Shown here: piece after piece, positions 3,327-14,650 of the stretch
Numbering within the stretch: the stretch's first letter is position 1
How the letters are laid out: the number at the start of each line of letters is the position of its first letter
Virus record (IMG/VR): IMGVR_UViG_3300027770_000025
Span: 186,001 to 250,000 of that record
DNA: 64,000 nucleotides
Reading direction: 5' to 3' (one strand)
Position numbers and translations under genes: made by a program
Notes under the pieces: generated by a model
Seen by the model: the letters and a program-made list of their open reading frames with translations, nothing else
What the model was told of the DNA's origin: nothing
The model's database searches: none

Positions 3327-5261
3327 TTAATTTTTTCTTTTTGCAAATATTACTCCGTGATCTGCATTGTTATCAACCTCTTTTTGTATTAATTCATCAT
3401 AAAGCTTAACCGCAAAATCAGCGCTAACTAATTTTTCTATTAACATATTGACCCTTCCGTCGTTATTGTCATGGAATTCTAGAATTATATTTTTAGCTTT
3501 AGCTAGAGATGCAATATCAGTATTACTAAGAAGATCATATTCAGCACCCTCTATATCAATCTTTAGAAGATCAACTGAATCATGATCAGACATCAAAGAG
3601 TTTAGTGTTTGCGATTTAACCAAAACAGTATTATCACCTATAGTTTTAGCAATGCTTGAAACTAGGCTGTTTCCTGGATCTACACTAAGATTAACATCCT
3701 CGCCATCCGAGGTCAAAGCAATCTCACTGAAGATAACATTTGGATTTTCTGAGTGCATTTTTCTGAATTCATTAGCGGCTAGGTGATTTGGTTCTATTGA
3801 GATAACTTTTTCAAACCCTACATCTAAACAATACTCTGTGAATAATCCAACATTAGCACCAACGTCAATAGCAACTTTCTTTTGGAATATGCTATCGGTC
3901 ATAATGTCATATATTCGGTCAGTGAAGAACTCTTCATAGTTTCTAAATATAGGATCTTTCGTATCCAATCTGCAAGTCTTCTTTGTTACGTTCCTAAATC
4001 TTATTATAGATTCTGAGATCACCTCTTCTCCCTGTTTATATTCAATTAAGAATCCACCAAAATTTGCATTATTTTGGAAATCGTAAATGTGGATGGGCAC
4101 TGGGATTATCCAATATGATCCACCTAAACTAAAGTTTATAGTGCAATGAAATATATTAGAACCGCTGTCCACATCCTTAACATAAACATCACAATCGAGT
4201 TCCTTTATGTTTCTTGAATCCCCTATATAAACTATATCAAGTTTATTATCCCATGGAGAAAATTTATGTATAAACATATCGCTTTTATTATTCATAGCTA
4301 ATTCTTTTTTAAGTTCTAATATTTCCCTTATCTGGTTTGCTATCCCTGTTTTATCATCACTTATAAAAAACTTTAGAGTGTTTGATTCCTGATACATGTC
4401 AACGTAGACAGGGAGATTTCTTAGGAGCAATGGGGCTTTCCAAGATATTGCTTCTTTGATAACAAGAGGGCTTGTTTCTTTATCATTAAATAAAGGTATT
4501 GACGGGAATATAACAAGATCCGCTGCCTGATAGAATAGATCTACGTCATCTCTTTCTCCCCATACCTTACAATTGCTGGGAAGATTGCTTGTGATAGGAT
4601 TCCAATACCATTTAAAATTATCAGCCATTGTACCGATGAAATGAAATTCCACTTCTGGTAGTAGCCTTGCAATCTCTGCTGTTTCCCTTTGATTTTTTCT
4701 TGGTGTAAATATACCTATTTGGATTACGTGTTTCTTATTAGGATCCAGCCCTAATTTTGCTCTGCTATCTAAATAATCTCTTACAGGTTTCTTAGCTATC
4801 TCGTGCTCGATAACTTCTATGGGTACTTTAAGATCTCTTAACAGATTAACCTGCCAAGGGCTAACGACCACAAATTTATCGGGAAGGTATATTTTTTCTT
4901 CAGGGGAAACCGATGAATCGTGCATGGTCTCAAATATTTTATATTCTCTGTCGTCGGAGAATATAATATCCAAAAGATGGTGACTTAAGAATTGCTCGCA
5001 TGGTTCTTCGAAATGTATAATATCAGGTTTCATCTCCTTAATCGCCTTGATAAGAATATCCTCAGGCTTTTCCCCCCATGTTATTATTCTCTCCGCACCA
5101 AGTATGGATTCTATTCTTTTCCTGATTGTATTATAGGAAAACTCGTGTCTTTTTTCAAAAACCCAAACTTCAGCTTCGTCTTTGATTTTGTCTATTTTAT
5201 TCTTTAAATATTCCGGCATTCCTCCGGTAGACAGATATGGTACAATATAAAAAACTCTCAA
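3327..5261 (-). CDS. GT4 glycosyltransferase fused to FkbM-family methyltransferase
   Basis: LSTGGMPEYL, IGIFTPRKNQ, FYQAADLVIFPS...PLVIKEAIS; C-term IDVGANVGLF, SIEP, LLKIDIEGAE. Confidence 0.85.
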   Translation of the reverse strand: MRVFYIVPYLSTGGMPEYLKNKIDKIKDEAEVWVFEKRHEFSYNTIRKRIESILGAERIITWGEKPEDILIKAIKEMKPDIIHFEEPCEQFLSHHLLDIIFSDDREYKIFETMHDSSVSPEEKIYLPDKFVVVSPWQVNLLRDLKVPIEVIEHEIAKKPVRDYLDSRAKLGLDPNKKHVIQIGIFTPRKNQRETAEIARLLPEVEFHFIGTMADNFKWYWNPITSNLPSNCKVWGERDDVDLFYQAADLVIFPSIPLFNDKETSPLVIKEAISWKAPLLLRNLPVYVDMYQESNTLKFFISDDKTGIANQIREILELKKELAMNNKSDMFIHKFSPWDNKLDIVYIGDSRNIKELDCDVYVKDVDSGSNIFHCTINFSLGGSYWIIPVPIHIYDFQNNANFGGFLIEYKQGEEVISESIIRFRNVTKKTCRLDTKDPIFRNYEEFFTDRIYDIMTDSIFQKKVAIDVGANVGLFTEYCLDVGFEKVISIEPNHLAANEFRKMHSENPNVIFSEIALTSDGEDVNLSVDPGNSLVSSIAKTIGDNTVLVKSQTLNSLMSDHDSVDLLKIDIEGAEYDLLSNTDIASLAKAKNIILEFHDNNDGRVNMLIEKLVSADFAVKLYDELIQKEVDNNADHGVIFAKRKN

Positions 5262-5314
5262 TGTTTTGTATTTATAGGTTCTATTGTAAAAGTCAAATAA
5301 AATTTCGGGTAAAA

Positions 5315-5337
5315 GTATTAAAGGGGTGCCTTTGTAC
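5315..5337 (+). repeat. Left arm of 23-nt imperfect inverted repeat (GTATTAAAGGGGTGCCTTTGTAC)
   Basis: Matches the reverse complement of 6234-6256 with two single-base indels. Confidence 0.85.
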
Positions 5338-5342
5338 GAAAT

Positions 5343-6155
5343 TTATTGATCTAGAGATTCGCCACAGTTAGGGCAAAATTTCCATGTTTTTTTCTTGGAT
5401 CTTGTTCCACATCCGGTACAATAATCCCTAATCTCAGTAACCTCTACAGGCTTAGCTGATCTCGGAAGAATTTGATACTCCGATGTGTAACCGCAATACC
5501 AGGAGTAACTACCTGAATCTTTTCCGAAGTCCTGATCAGATTTTTCCCCCTTTTCTACTCTACCGGTTTCAAGAGAACCTGCAACCGAGCAGTTAACTAA
5601 TCCAGATAATCTTTTAGAAGAGTAACCAATCGTACCACTCAATGCTGAAGTGTTGCTAGCGTAATAAACATTGTTGGTCGTAGTTCCTCCGAAAATAATA
5701 GGATTCACTGTTCCTGGGTCGTTCGTCCAAGTTTGGTGATAAGGTACATAGGCTGTCCCTGTTGAAAGAGGGCTCCAACTGTAACTCGTGTGTTCCTGAT
5801 AGAACTCAACCTTTACCTTACCGTTGTTTTTGATTGCCTCTTTAGCCTCTTCTGTGTCATCAACATCGTAAGTCGAGAATAAGAATTTCTTCTTCTCTTC
5901 GATGAAACGATCCAAGAAGTATCTCTGCCCGGGTCTAAGTACTAAACCTGAGCTACTGATAATCTTGTCATTGAGATAGATTTTAGCTAAATAGGATGTT
6001 GATGTTGGATTATAGAGCTCGATTTGAAACTCTTGTCCATTGTCTAGATAAACTAGATCTTCCTTTGAGCCGTAGATTTTTTGTCTGTTGTTGGATACGG
6101 CTACCCAAGCTTGTGGTTTTGGGGTACTGTATACCCCGATCGTGTTGTTTTTCAT
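5343..6155 (-). CDS. Hypothetical protein with C-terminal double zinc ribbon
   Basis: 270 aa ORF ending YCTGCG...KFCPNCG. Confidence 0.75.
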   Translation of the reverse strand: MKNNTIGVYSTPKPQAWVAVSNNRQKIYGSKEDLVYLDNGQEFQIELYNPTSTSYLAKIYLNDKIISSSGLVLRPGQRYFLDRFIEEKKKFLFSTYDVDDTEEAKEAIKNNGKVKVEFYQEHTSYSWSPLSTGTAYVPYHQTWTNDPGTVNPIIFGGTTTNNVYYASNTSALSGTIGYSSKRLSGLVNCSVAGSLETGRVEKGEKSDQDFGKDSGSYSWYCGYTSEYQILPRSAKPVEVTEIRDYCTGCGTRSKKKTWKFCPNCGESLDQ

Positions 6156-6233
6156 TTTACCTTTTTCTTTTTTTTAAAATCCCATCGCTGCTATTGCTAA
6201 CAACTCTAAGGCCATTTTGACCCGGGACACTAA

Positions 6234-6256
6234 GTACGAAAGGCACCCTTTAATAC
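6234..6256 (-). repeat. Right arm of 23-nt inverted repeat (minus strand GTATTAAAGGGTGCCTTTCGTAC)
   Basis: Direct comparison with 5315-5337. Confidence 0.85.
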
Positions 6257-6279
6257 ATTCTATATATAATCACTGGTTA

Positions 6280-6741
6280 TTACCAGAAATCTTCTCCCTC
6301 TTGCCCCTTTGAGTATTCATTATAACCACCCAATGAATTATCATAGTCATCATCCTCAAATTCTGCATCGCTAAGGAATTCCCTTTCTGATTCAGAAATT
6401 CTTTCAAACCAATCCCCGTTGTCTTTATACCAAACGGTGTTTATAGCGGGTGTTCCTGCTGTCCACTCTATTTTTGAATCATTCGATAAACCTCCGGGTA
6501 TAATTGAATCTAGATCGTTGACTACTTTTTCTAAATCGTTTTGTAGATCTGTGTCTAGTTCTACATCATCAACGTATATTTCTAAATATTCATTAAAGTT
6601 AGGTTCCATACAATCAATAAAGATATTATATAAAATAATGAAATCTTCTCTTGATTCCATTAGTAATTTAATATCTAATATTTCGCTAGCTTTAAACTTG
6701 TTATTGGTTATTAGCTCTGCATTTAAAATGTAATTCTTCAT
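6280..6741 (-). CDS. Hypothetical acidic protein
   Basis: 153 aa ORF in operon orientation. Confidence 0.65.
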   Translation of the reverse strand: MKNYILNAELITNNKFKASEILDIKLLMESREDFIILYNIFIDCMEPNFNEYLEIYVDDVELDTDLQNDLEKVVNDLDSIIPGGLSNDSKIEWTAGTPAINTVWYKDNGDWFERISESEREFLSDAEFEDDDYDNSLGGYNEYSKGQEGEDFW

Positions 6742-14183: not shown

Positions 14184-14187
14184 CGTG

Positions 14188-14650
14188 TGGATCTGCAGGG
14201 AGTCGAACCCTGGTCTCCTTCAGTTAATACTAAGAATTCATTCACAGGCTTAGAAAGTTTTTTATAAACTTACAAACTAATCGGGTTTATGACACCAGCA
14301 AACATTTTGCTGTCTTTTAGTGACTTACAGCGTCAGTCAGAGAACTTATACTAACAGCGATCTTAAGGGTATTGATGTTATCTCAGGGTTACTGATCATA
14401 AGCTCTACTTTTTTGGTACTGTTAACCCTTTTTCCCAACGTCACATTTTTTTAAACGGAGTAAGTGAGACTCCGGAGGTTATGCAGCGTAAGCGTACTCA
14501 ACCTCAGTTACAGGAGTACCAAACGAGTTGATAGCGTCCCAAACTGATTTTTTGCCATTTATAGCTTTATATAGGTTATTAAAGTGTTTCCAATACTAAC
14601 ACTGCCTGCATTCAAAGAACTACGCCTGCGGATCAATTCCGGTCAGACCC
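14188..14650 (-). ncRNA. ssrA: tmRNA (~463 nt) with tag (A)GKKSVWDAINSFGTPVTEVEYAYAA
   Basis: 5' GGGTCTG pairs with 3' CAGATCC-A including G3:U70; T-arm CAGGG-TTCGACT-CCCTG; resume context ATAAAT-GGC; tag frame 14556..14479 ends YAYAA-stop. Confidence 0.92.

What the first reader, a model, noticed from the sequence alone, without database searches (positions are those of the whole stretch)
5315..6268. Gene enclosed by a 23-nt inverted repeat: whole-mRNA closing stem or invertible cassette
Seen: GTATTAAAGGGGTGCCTTTGTAC (5315-5337) is nearly the reverse complement of 6234-6256. The arms lie just outside the zinc-ribbon gene, and a TATATATA box at 6261-6268 sits immediately 5' of the upstream arm. 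A transcript from that box would begin with the arm that pairs with its own 3' end, giving a ~21-bp stem that encloses ~900 nt. Inference: this could be RNA processing or circularisation, 5'-3' fold-back translational control, or a recombinase-targeted cassette. No recombinase or reverse transcriptase is seen in the window.
Basis: partly seen in the sequence, partly recalled or inferred. Interest (0 to 1): 0.7.

Follow-up and report, generated by a model that had tools for sequence, protein, structure and literature searches.

The report
Phage mRNA closed by end-pairing
The two inverted repeats are most likely the base-paired 5' and 3' ends of one phage messenger RNA: the closing stem has been kept by compensating mutations across more than a hundred related huge-phage sequences, next to a structured leader that matches no Rfam family, which makes it an unusually well-conserved case of a bacterial-type mRNA controlled through contact between its two ends.

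Summary
Arms 5312-5337 and 6234-6259 pair over about 27 positions with two 1-nt bulges. The motif occurs nowhere else in the 348-kb phage genome, and this gene ranks first of 370-424 ORFs for flank complementarity.

Homologues of the enclosed 270-aa zinc-ribbon gene occur in huge phages, including Lak megaphages. About 85% of roughly 100 related loci keep 5'/3' complementarity at the same places, but with more than 20 unrelated arm sequences. Cognate arms pair far better than non-cognate ones (0 of 100,000-200,000 permutations), and this held in an independent metagenome set.

The 5' arm starts 5-7 nt after a promoter-like box. In distant clades the 3' arm ends 1-4 nt before a classical terminator. 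Between the arm and the AUG lies a three-way-junction leader (P1-P3) with strong covariation and no Rfam match.

The inner part of the 5' arm is also complementary to the motif just before the AUG. This suggests a switch in which the 3' end frees the ribosome site; that part is inferred.

No inverted arrangement was seen in any locus or in DNA metagenome contigs, and synteny is fixed. It is an RNA closing stem, not an invertible cassette. Transcript ends remain unmapped.

The parts
6260..6268 (-). Promoter-like box TATATATAG directly 5' of the upstream arm
   Evidence: Sequence. KATATATAR has 12 matches in the window, 10 of them on the coding (-) strand; those checked against the ORF list lie in short gaps just upstream of ORF starts. 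The total count (12 against 7.6 expected) is not itself enriched. The equivalent position in distant relatives holds TTGACA-N17-TATATT. Promoter function and the transcription start are inferred.
6234..6259 (-). P0 5' arm (core 6234-6256); its inner part 6239-6245 (UGCCUUU) is the proposed switch strand
   Evidence: Pairs with 5312-5337. Conserved in position with co-varying sequence in relatives.
6174..6233 (-). Structured leader core, a three-way junction: P1 6224-6233 with 6174-6183, P2 6219-6223 with 6209-6213, junction UAGAG 6204-6208, P3 6198-6204 with 6187-6193
   Evidence: RNAalifold consensus. Pair counts: 94-96% of cells paired against 74-79% in shuffles and 34-51% when partners are slid; 18 of 22 pairs show double changes. 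Covariance model R1 gives one hit in the whole genome, at window 6149-6233. No Rfam match.
6158..6164 (-). Pre-AUG motif AAAGGUA (ribosome-site region), alternative partner (P0') of the 5' arm's inner part
   Evidence: Complementary to 6239-6245. Cognate versus non-cognate tests in two data sets. Leader-only folds. Function inferred.
5343..6155 (-). Enclosed gene: 270-aa protein with a beta-sandwich, a disordered Ser/Thr/Asn-rich linker and a C-terminal zinc ribbon; function unknown
   Evidence: ORF. Pfam zinc-ribbon hits below cut-off. At least 1,583 homologues. AlphaFold model with pLDDT above 90 in the folded parts. No informative fold match.
5312..5337 (-). P0 3' arm (core 5315-5337), starting 5 nt after the stop codon; 5327-5333 (AAAGGCA) resembles the pre-AUG motif
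   Evidence: Present in both the MFE and the centroid fold of the 955-nt transcript. About 22.6 base pairs expected in the ensemble.

Best explanation
The repeats are the two strands of an RNA helix (P0) that joins the first nucleotides of a monocistronic phage mRNA to the segment just after its stop codon.

The transcript would start a few nucleotides after the TATATATAG box. Its order is: P0 5' arm, a conserved three-way-junction leader (P1-P2-P3), an A-rich ribosome-loading tract with AAAGGUA, the 270-codon ORF, and the P0 3' arm.

Shown by comparison: P0 and P1-P3 are under selection as base-paired structures, on the sense strand, at fixed positions.

Inferred function has two parts.
(i) P0 buries both RNA ends in a duplex. 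This would protect the mRNA from 5'-end-dependent and 3'-exonucleolytic decay. It also holds the stop and start sites at one helical junction.
(ii) The inner part of the 5' arm can instead pair with the pre-AUG motif (P0'). On a nascent or 3'-truncated RNA the ribosome site would then be masked. It would be released only when the longer, better-matched 3' arm is made and displaces it. Translation would thus be licensed by a complete 3' end.
For: Conservation of P0 with changing sequence:
- Complementarity persists in relatives with 59-99% protein identity, including an A-U to G-C double change.
- In 63 unique viral loci the arms stay at about -110..-78 from the AUG and +2..+38 after the stop, with more than 13 unrelated sequences.
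- Across 13 arm families, cognate duplexes average -23.5 kcal/mol against -9.6 (sd 3.6) for non-cognate pairs. The cognate is best in its row in 13 of 13 cases, and 0 of 100,000 permutations reach the observed sum.
- In an independent set of 18 new arm families from metagenome contigs, the cognate score is 33.3 against 15.8 (sd 3.9), with 0 of 200,000 permutations.
- A 642-kb huge phage (LR756502) has a perfect 14-bp pair followed by a terminator.

The arms sit at the transcript ends:
- In L085 and L067 the -10 hexamer of an 11/12 sigma-70-type promoter ends 5-6 nt before the 5' arm, and the terminator hairpin starts 1-4 nt after the 3' arm.
- The window's box belongs to a motif that recurs upstream of ORFs on the coding strand.

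Sense-strand RNA:
- The adjoining leader helices have many near-invariant G-U pairs and 18 of 22 pairs with double changes.
- Within P0 there are 31 G-U against 16 A-C among 1,102 Watson-Crick pairs (p=0.04).

Thermodynamics:
- P0 and P1-P3 appear in both the MFE and the centroid fold of the full 955-nt RNA.
- P0 is expected at 12.7-22.6 bp in the ensembles of six families.

Expression: four freshwater metatranscriptomes carry contigs only within 5330-6409 of the 3-kb stretch laid. Two of them end at 5330 and 5336, inside the 3' arm.

P0':
- The complementary segment pairs co-vary: UGCCUUU/AAAGGUA, GUUAACU/AGUUAAU, UUUCCUU/AAGGAAA, GUGGUGC/GCACUAU, and in the new data GUCUC/GAGAU, UUAGA/UCUAA, UCUGG/CCAGA, CUUGU/ACAAG.
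- 0 of 200,000 permutations in each data set.
- Leader-only MFE folds show P0' in about 12 of 17 families.
Against: - Transcript ends have not been mapped experimentally. One low-depth metatranscriptome contig (6094-6409) reads through the box into the upstream gene; this could be read-through RNA or DNA carry-over.
- The RNA runs were found by searching with this gene, so its coverage is partly by selection.
- The window's clade has no recognisable terminator after the 3' arm.
- About 10-15% of loci keep the leader but lack P0.
- Co-evolving inverted repeats alone cannot separate RNA pairing from twin protein sites. The G-U over A-C excess is modest and not corrected for phylogeny.
- P0' is only 5-8 bp. 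Per-sequence shuffles give a mean z of only 1.8. The cognate is best in its row in only 5 of 18 cases.
- Equilibrium folds of stop-truncated mRNAs that include the whole ORF show P0' clearly only in L054, and predicted ribosome-site accessibility does not change otherwise. If real, the switch is kinetic.
- The host and the protein's function are unknown.
Confidence: 0.75

Rival explanations
1. P0 is mainly an RNase III processing site. A long-range duplex forms on read-through transcripts and is cut to excise or inactivate the gene's mRNA, as with the stems that flank 16S and 23S rRNA or the phage T7 early processing sites.
For: In the window's clade the helix is about 27 bp with two conserved bulge positions, within the RNase III substrate size. 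No terminator follows the 3' arm. One RNA contig reads through the promoter box, and two RNA contigs end inside the 3' arm.
Against: In most other clades the conserved helix is only 11-15 bp, and the unit has its own promoter and terminator, so no excision is needed. Contig ends at a depth of about 2 are weak evidence. No cleavage data exist.
Confidence: 0.12
2. The closed loop mainly serves ribosome recycling. P0 and P1 hold the stop codon next to the start site, so terminating ribosomes re-initiate on the same mRNA, a bacterial analogue of the eukaryotic closed loop.
For: Geometry only. P0 and P1 are separated by 0-3 nt. The 3' arm starts mostly 6-14 nt after the stop, roughly the leading edge of a terminating ribosome. 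In the window P1 ends 18 nt before the AUG.
Against: There is no functional evidence. The same geometry follows from simple end protection. Short 3' UTRs are common anyway.
Confidence: 0.08
3. The repeats act on DNA, either as sites for an invertase that flips the gene relative to its promoter, or as terminal inverted repeats of a mobile gene cassette.
For: Inverted repeats flank exactly one gene, with the promoter-like box outside them. The arms of related elements co-evolve, as transposon ends also do.
Against: - The upstream neighbours (RNase HII, a 94-aa ORF, the acidic 153-aa ORF) are conserved and co-oriented in 14 of the 17 loci fetched with 3-kb flanks, down to 58% identity of the enclosed protein.
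- The leader lies on the promoter side in all 94 loci where model R1 scored.
- No strand-switch joints were found, and DNA contigs span both arms in four metagenomes.
- There is no target-site duplication: the flanks read TTCGGGTA and CTATATAT.
- The enclosed protein resembles no recombinase.
- The arms coincide with predicted transcript ends.
Confidence: 0.02
4. The arms are two operator sites for one DNA-binding protein (possibly the zinc-ribbon protein itself) that loops the DNA around the gene.
For: In the window each arm is a near-palindrome. One site overlaps the predicted transcription start. Operators and their binding protein could co-evolve.
Against: In most families the arms are not palindromic and match only as inverted copies. 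Arm length ranges from 11 to about 30 nt. G-U is tolerated more than A-C. The 5' arm is also complementary to the pre-AUG motif, which has no meaning for DNA binding.
Confidence: 0.03

Closest known systems
Bacillus subtilis hbs mRNA 5'/3'-UTR interaction (Braun, Durand and Condon 2017, PMC5737220)
   Same: [quoted passage not shown] It modulates ribonuclease access to the leader and ties stability to translation initiation.
   Different: [quoted passage not shown] Here the pairing is kept across a very broad phage family with more than 20 arm sequences, involves the extreme 5' end, is up to about 27 bp long, and sits beside a conserved three-way junction. Nuclease effects are untested here.
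Type I toxin mRNAs with 5'-3' fold-back: hok (fbi element) and Helicobacter aapA1/aapA3 long-distance interaction with co-transcriptional metastable hairpins (PMC5416894, PMC6733600)
   Same: A monocistronic mRNA whose 5' and 3' ends pair. The pairing is supported by covariation. Weaker local structures mask the ribosome site while the RNA is being made and are replaced by the long-distance helix once transcription is complete.
   Different: The logic appears reversed. In hok and aapA the full-length closed form is translationally inert and 3' trimming activates it. Here the closed form leaves the ribosome site open in silico. The product is a 270-aa beta-sandwich/zinc-ribbon protein, not a small toxic peptide, and no antisense RNA is evident.
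Staphylococcus aureus icaR mRNA (3' UTR UCCCC motif pairs with the Shine-Dalgarno region; PMC3868564, PMC7821165)
   Same: A cis 5'UTR-3'UTR base-pairing that controls translation and creates a double-stranded RNase III substrate.
   Different: In icaR the 3' UTR is the anti-ribosome-site strand and represses translation. Here the 3' arm resembles the ribosome-site motif and pairs with an upstream anti-site strand, so it would de-repress.
Anti-antisense activation of rpoS by the small RNA DsrA (PMC2831331)
   Same: An inhibitory leader strand that masks the ribosome site is titrated away by a better-matched RNA partner.
   Different: DsrA acts in trans and depends on Hfq. Here the activator would be the mRNA's own 3' end.
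5'-terminal stem-loop stabilisers such as the E. coli ompA leader, and RNase III stems flanking rRNAs
   Same: Base pairing of the very first nucleotides protects against 5'-end-dependent decay. Long-range helices that enclose a whole functional RNA exist in rRNA operons.
   Different: Here the 5'-terminal helix is closed by the 3' end of a protein-coding mRNA, not by a local hairpin. It is too short for RNase III in most clades.

Membership tests
mRNAs with a cis 5'UTR-3'UTR interaction (hbs, icaR, RNAIII type) | Complementary segments in the 5' and 3' untranslated regions of the same gene | tested here: met
   Kept with co-varying sequence in two independent locus sets.
mRNAs with a cis 5'UTR-3'UTR interaction (hbs, icaR, RNAIII type) | Both segments lie inside one transcript | tested here: inconclusive
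   Promoter and terminator predictions bracket the arms in L085 and L067. Metatranscriptome contigs cover the gene, but the ends are unresolved and one contig reads through the box.
mRNAs with a cis 5'UTR-3'UTR interaction (hbs, icaR, RNAIII type) | The pairing changes mRNA stability or translation | not testable with these tools
   Needs arm and compensatory mutants in a reporter or an infected host.
Type I toxin fold-back mRNAs (hok, aapA) | 5'-3' long-distance interaction supported by covariation | tested here: met
Type I toxin fold-back mRNAs (hok, aapA) | Encodes a small toxic peptide controlled by an antisense RNA | tested here: not met
   The product is a conserved 270-aa beta-sandwich/zinc-ribbon protein. 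An antisense RNA was not looked for specifically.
Type I toxin fold-back mRNAs (hok, aapA) | Ribosome site sequestered in the full-length closed form | tested here: not met
   In silico only. The pre-AUG region is unpaired in the full-length MFE. Its unpaired probability is 0.61-0.95 in six families.
icaR-type 3'UTR anti-ribosome-site control | The 3' UTR segment pairs with the ribosome-binding site | tested here: not met
   The 3' arm pairs with the 5' arm. It resembles, rather than complements, the pre-AUG motif.
RNase III processing stems enclosing an RNA | Duplex of about 20 bp or more formed by flanking sequences | tested here: inconclusive
   Met in the window's clade (about 27 bp). Not met in most other clades (11-15 bp).
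RNase III processing stems enclosing an RNA | Staggered cleavage within the duplex | not testable with these tools
   Only contig-level RNA data were available.
Invertible DNA segments (site-specific invertase switches) | Both orientations present in populations or relatives | tested here: not met
   One orientation in all loci. No strand-switch joints in contigs from four DNA runs; contigs can miss rare variants.
Invertible DNA segments (site-specific invertase switches) | Cognate recombinase encoded nearby | not tested
The window's other ORFs were not screened.
Transposon or cassette with terminal inverted repeats | Variable genomic location, target-site duplication, transposase | tested here: not met
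   Conserved synteny. Flanks TTCGGGTA and CTATATAT are not duplicated. No transposase-like domain in the enclosed protein.
Any Rfam 15 family (for the leader and arms) | Covariance-model match | tested here: not met
   No hit better than E=2.5 in 5100-6500; all were far below gathering scores. Only a tmRNA elsewhere in the window.

The most novel reading that the evidence does not exclude
The element is a three-partner RNA switch in which an mRNA's own 3' end licenses its translation. While the RNA is incomplete or 3'-degraded, the first nucleotides of the transcript mask the ribosome site (P0'). The 3' arm, a longer decoy of that site, then captures the masking strand to form P0. This opens the ribosome site, seals both ends against nucleases and places stop and start at one junction. 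It would be a cis-acting, 3'-end-dependent anti-antisense activator, the mirror image of hok/aapA fold-back inhibition. It is conserved across huge phages together with a new three-way-junction leader that may bind a still unknown factor.
Probability: 0.4. Interest if true: 0.85.

Novelty: new variant of a known kind. Interest (0 to 1): 0.75.

Why it matters
Base pairing between the two ends of a bacterial-type mRNA is known from only a handful of cases (hbs, icaR, RNAIII, type I toxins). The hbs case is reported as not conserved in close relatives, and the icaR pairing motif is absent in S. epidermidis (PMC7821165).

This one has the kind of evidence that usually establishes an RNA structure. 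There are dozens of independent compensatory solutions at a fixed position. They span freshwater, marine and gut huge phages, including relatives of the Lak megaphages and the 460-740-kb phages of Al-Shayeb et al..

That gives a natural, sequence-diverse test bed for three questions:
- How does end-to-end pairing affect mRNA decay and translation?
- Does it prevent translation of incomplete messages?
- What does the new leader motif recognise?

It also flags a conserved, individually regulated and still uncharacterised protein of huge phages.

Tried and rejected
- Repeated regulatory motif (a promoter/stem-loop cassette of the T4 PeSL type): rejected. The motif is unique to the two sites in the whole genome.
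- Direct repeats of a palindrome: rejected. Inverted alignments beat direct ones, and most families' arms are not palindromic.
- Nucleotide search against GenBank phages: no match.
- PHROGs: no hit. Pfam: only sub-threshold zinc-ribbon hits.
- First AlphaFold model from 19 sequences: poor (pLDDT 54). A second model from 89 sequences was good in the folded parts. Foldseek against PDB, AlphaFold DB and BFVD gave only uncharacterised beta-sandwich proteins.
- Profile search of PDB sequences: only zinc-ribbon similarity.
- G-U versus A-C asymmetry as a strand test: only weakly informative (p=0.057 and 0.04).
- Sense versus antisense duplex energies: do not discriminate.
- Intrinsic terminator after the window's 3' arm: none found.
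- Equilibrium folding of stop-truncated mRNAs: did not reproduce the P0' masking except in one family. An earlier run of that test timed out.
- Similarity of the pre-AUG window to the 3' arm, measured by longest identical run: not significant (p about 0.07).
- Lak megaphage loci: gave no covariance-model hit and need an alternative genetic code, so they were not analysed further.
Full report
**Context.** The window is bases 186,001-250,000 of a 348,582-bp virus record that CheckV rates complete. G+C is about 35%, and nearly all ORFs lie on the - strand. The finding concerns one gene, 5343..6155 (-), which encodes a 270-aa protein with a C-terminal CxxC...CPxC zinc ribbon.

In the mRNA sense the upstream arm is 6259-6234 and the downstream arm is 5337-5312. 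Allowing two single-nucleotide bulges, they form 26 standard pairs and one G-U. The downstream arm begins 5 nt after the stop codon. The upstream arm ends 78 nt before the AUG and follows TATATATAG (6268-6260).

The 23-mer has no other match in the window at up to three mismatches. Its 13-nt core occurs only at these two sites in the entire genome. Among all ORFs of the genome, this gene has the strongest complementarity between its upstream and downstream flanks by two measures:
- Duplex energy of -39.6 kcal/mol, against a mean of -15.6 (sd 5.3) over 370 ORFs.
- Helix score of 44, against a non-cognate mean of 19.9 and a maximum of 35.

**The gene family.** The protein has at least 1,583 homologues in metagenomic contigs, many of them 200-430 kb long. 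By tblastn it also matches Prevotella Lak megaphages and the 460-740-kb 'huge phages' deposited as LR7565xx.

The alignment shows four regions: a conserved N-terminal domain, a variable Ser/Thr/Asn-rich linker, a conserved ETGRVEKG...SEYQILPRS segment and the zinc ribbon. An AlphaFold model from 89 sequences is confident (pLDDT above 90) for residues 10-122 and about 190-235, and shows a beta-sandwich. Structure searches return only uncharacterised proteins. The protein's function is unknown.

**The decisive comparison.** I fetched 17 and then 80 related loci from viral contigs and compared each gene's upstream flank with the reverse complement of its downstream flank.

Close relatives keep the same arms. 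They include a clean double change: UAUUAAAGGG becomes UAUUGAAGGG, with the partner U changed to C. More distant relatives keep complementarity at the same two places, about -110..-78 from the AUG and +2..+38 after the stop. Their arm sequences, however, are unrelated: GAGGAAAGAGCC, AGUGGUGCCCAUACU, GCGGUGCCUUUUACC, GAAGACGGUUUCCUUUA, UAUACGUUAACUC, GGAACCUCAC, GACCUUGUGGUU, UACAUUAGCUCAAGU, GAAAUCUUAUGAU and AUCGUGAUUGA.

With one representative per arm family (13 families):
- Cognate 5'/3' duplexes average -23.5 kcal/mol, against -9.6 (sd 3.6) for non-cognate pairs.
- The cognate partner is the best in its row in all 13 cases.
- None of 100,000 permutations reaches the observed total.

A second, independent set of 73 metagenome loci yielded 18 further arm families with the same result: 33.3 against 15.8 (sd 3.9), and 0 of 200,000 permutations. 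A 642-kb huge phage has a perfect 14-bp pair. About 10-15% of loci keep the leader but have no detectable closing helix.

**RNA rather than DNA.** Four lines of evidence point to a helix in the sense transcript.

1. *The arms coincide with predicted transcript ends.* In L085 and L067 an 11/12 match to TTGACA-N17-TATATT ends 5-6 nt before the 5' arm. A classical hairpin-plus-U-run terminator begins 1-4 nt after the 3' arm. In the window, the box belongs to a KATATATAR motif with 10 of 12 matches on the coding strand. Those checked against the ORF list lie in short gaps upstream of ORF starts.
2. *The sequence directly 3' of the arm is a structured RNA on the same strand (next section).* Its helices contain near-invariant G-U pairs, which would be C-A mismatches on the other strand.
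3. *Within P0, transitions that give G-U in the sense strand outnumber those that give A-C.* The count is 31 to 16 among 1,102 Watson-Crick pairs (p=0.04). It is uncorrected for phylogeny, so it is weak evidence.
4. *There is no sign of DNA rearrangement.*
   - The upstream neighbours are conserved and co-oriented down to 58% identity of the enclosed protein.
   - The leader lies on the promoter side in all 94 loci where the covariance model scored.
   - Contigs from four DNA metagenomes span both arms in the reference orientation without strand-switch joints.
   - No target-site duplication flanks the arms.

**A new structured leader.** The roughly 85 nt between the 5' arm and the A-rich pre-AUG tract are more conserved than the neighbouring proteins.

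RNAalifold predicts a three-way junction. In the window its parts are:
- P1: 6224-6233 with 6174-6183.
- P2: 6219-6223 with 6209-6213.
- A conserved UAGAG junction.
- P3: 6198-6204 with 6187-6193.

On a 49-sequence MAFFT alignment, 95.8% of cells pair, against 79.4% in shuffles and 37-51% when partners are slid. Fourteen of 17 pairs show double changes. On a 52-sequence model-based alignment I added five outer P1 pairs that were not part of the model. Four of them form standard pairs in nearly every sequence and three co-vary strongly; the fifth is unpaired in 23 of 52 sequences, an internal mismatch. For example, one position splits AU 24, UA 24, GC 2. Over all 22 pairs, 94.1% of cells are paired and 18 pairs show double changes.

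The covariance model built from this alignment behaves specifically:
- One hit in the own 348-kb genome.
- One hit per locus in 52 of 59 sources searched, each just upstream of the gene.
- Hits in 42 of 54 new metagenome loci, all at the same position upstream of the gene.
- Hits in two LR7565xx huge phages.

Rfam 15 has no matching family. The literature searches I ran found no description of it, although a large anonymous catalogue of phage RNA candidates exists (PMC10690425).

**Whole-transcript folding.** The 955-nt RNA from 6260 to 5306 folds with P0 and P1-P3 in both the minimum-free-energy and the centroid structure (z = -4.6 against shuffles). In six families the ensemble contains 12.7-22.6 expected P0 base pairs. 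The arms' own local hairpins are weak (-6 and -3.5 kcal/mol).

**A second partner for the 5' arm.** The inner part of the 5' arm is also complementary to the 5-8 nt that lie 2-14 nt before the AUG, and the two change together.

Pairs seen in the viral set: UGCCUUU/AAAGGUA (window), GUUAACU/AGUUAAU, AUUAGCU/AGUUAAU, UUUCCUU/AAGGAAA, GUGGUGC/GCACUAU and ACCUUGU/AUAAGGU. Pairs seen in the independent set: GUCUC/GAGAU, UUAGA/UCUAA, UCUGG/CCAGA and CUUGU/ACAAG.

Cognate scores exceed non-cognate ones in both sets (13.6 against 10.4, and 13.7 against 10.6), with 0 of 200,000 permutations in each. Folding the leader alone places this helix (P0') in the MFE structure in about 12 of 17 families.

The caveats are real:
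- The helix is short.
- Only a handful of independent motif changes underlie the statistic.
- Per-sequence shuffles are marginal.
- Equilibrium folds of stop-truncated RNAs that include the whole ORF show P0' clearly only in L054.

If P0' functions, it probably does so as a co-transcriptional, metastable structure, as documented for the aapA3 toxin mRNA (PMC6733600).

**Mechanism.**

*Shown:* a conserved, co-varying helix joins the gene's two flanks. A co-varying three-way junction follows the 5' arm. Both lie on the sense strand, between a promoter-like box and (in many clades) a terminator.

*Inferred, most likely:* the mRNA is monocistronic and its first nucleotides pair with the segment after the stop codon. 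Pairing of the extreme 5' end is a known way to block 5'-end-dependent decay, and a duplexed 3' end resists exonucleases. The closest experimental precedent is hbs, where a 14-bp 5'/3'-UTR pairing limits RNase Y cleavage of the leader (PMC5737220).

*Inferred, less certain:* the 3' arm competes with the ribosome site for the 5' arm, so only complete transcripts are fully translatable.

*Speculative:* P0 and P1 are contiguous (0-3 nt apart). The 3' arm typically starts 6-14 nt after the stop, and in the window P1 ends 18 nt before the AUG. The stop and start sites therefore sit at one junction, which could favour re-initiation.

**Direct RNA evidence is thin.** Four freshwater metatranscriptomes hold contigs from this gene. 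Within the 3 kb laid they cover only 5330-6409. Two contigs end at 5330 and 5336, inside the 3' arm. One low-depth contig (6094-6409) crosses the promoter box. Because the runs were found by searching with this gene, the coverage contrast is only suggestive.

**Comparison with known systems.** The element works like the small group of mRNAs with cis 5'-3' pairing. It differs from hbs in conservation, length and use of the extreme 5' end. It differs from icaR in polarity: the 3' arm resembles the ribosome site rather than complementing it. It differs from hok/aapA in logic and in product: the closed form appears translatable, and the protein is a 270-aa non-toxin-like protein.

An RNase III role is possible for the roughly 27-bp helix of the window's clade, but it cannot explain the 11-15-bp helices elsewhere. 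I therefore class the element as a new variant of a known kind, accompanied by a leader motif that matches no Rfam family.

**Verdict.** The invertible-cassette interpretation is not supported. Confidence is about 0.9 that P0 is a selected RNA helix, about 0.75 for the overall model and about 0.4 for the switch. Interest is 0.75.

Noticed in passing
window 14185-14650 (-): A phage-encoded tmRNA gene (Rfam RF00023, 62.6 bits; ARAGORN tag peptide EVEYAYAA).
   Followed up: no
window 10656, 18058, 28947, 35709, 44075, 48909, 50467, 54556 (all - strand): GATATATA(A/G) recurs on the coding strand just upstream of ORF starts (10 of 12 matches are on the - strand). It is probably a phage promoter motif of which the finding's TATATATAG is a variant.
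   Followed up: partly
own genome G000:C1:72946-73686 (+), outside the window: A 246-aa gene also has an ATATATAG box followed by a segment (AUAACAGGGUAACCCAU) complementary to the sequence 3 nt after its stop codon. It may be a second closing stem, but its score lies within the upper tail of the null.
   Followed up: partly
own genome G000:C1:105524-106000 (+), outside the window: An AU-rich complementarity of about 21 nt between -35..-13 before the AUG and +4 after the stop of a 158-aa ORF (score 34, against a null maximum of 35).
   Followed up: no
window 5343-6155 (-), model m741d4615f9a7: The protein's beta-sandwich fold matches uncharacterised proteins of giant viruses, nudiviruses, nimaviruses (Wsv390), iridoviruses (ICP-18) and baculoviruses (P22.2) at Foldseek E of 1e-10 to 1e-4, with TM of about 0.3-0.47. 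Some phage relatives carry a SHOCT domain in place of the zinc ribbon.
   Followed up: no
window 5297-5307 (-) and the following ~40 nt: A motif CGAAAUUUUAU about 5 nt after the 3' arm is conserved in the window's clade. It is followed by a T4-late-like CTATAAATA before the next gene (glycosyltransferase/FkbM methyltransferase fusion, 3327-5261).
   Followed up: no
L103 (LR756500.1) upstream ~272-300 and downstream of the stop: Two complementary segment pairs (GUUAAGG/CCUUAAC and UCUCACUUUGUU/AACAAAGUGAGA) occur in crossing order, so both cannot form as nested helices.
   Followed up: no
L037 and L040, about 1368-1388: These relatives keep the leader but have lost the 3' arm. The relic of the 5' arm still folds as a weak local 5' hairpin (-5 kcal/mol).
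   Followed up: partly
L100, L101 (Prevotella Lak phages): The homologous ORFs contain in-frame TAG codons, consistent with the alternative coding reported for Lak phages. The leader model gave no significant hit there, although a degenerate look-alike is visible by eye.
   Followed up: no
window 6207-6257, run X3 record 11: A low-depth DNA contig matches the 5' arm and the leader start with 4 differences, then diverges exactly at 6257 into a different A/T-rich upstream sequence. It is probably a co-occurring relative with another promoter region, not an inversion joint.
   Followed up: partly
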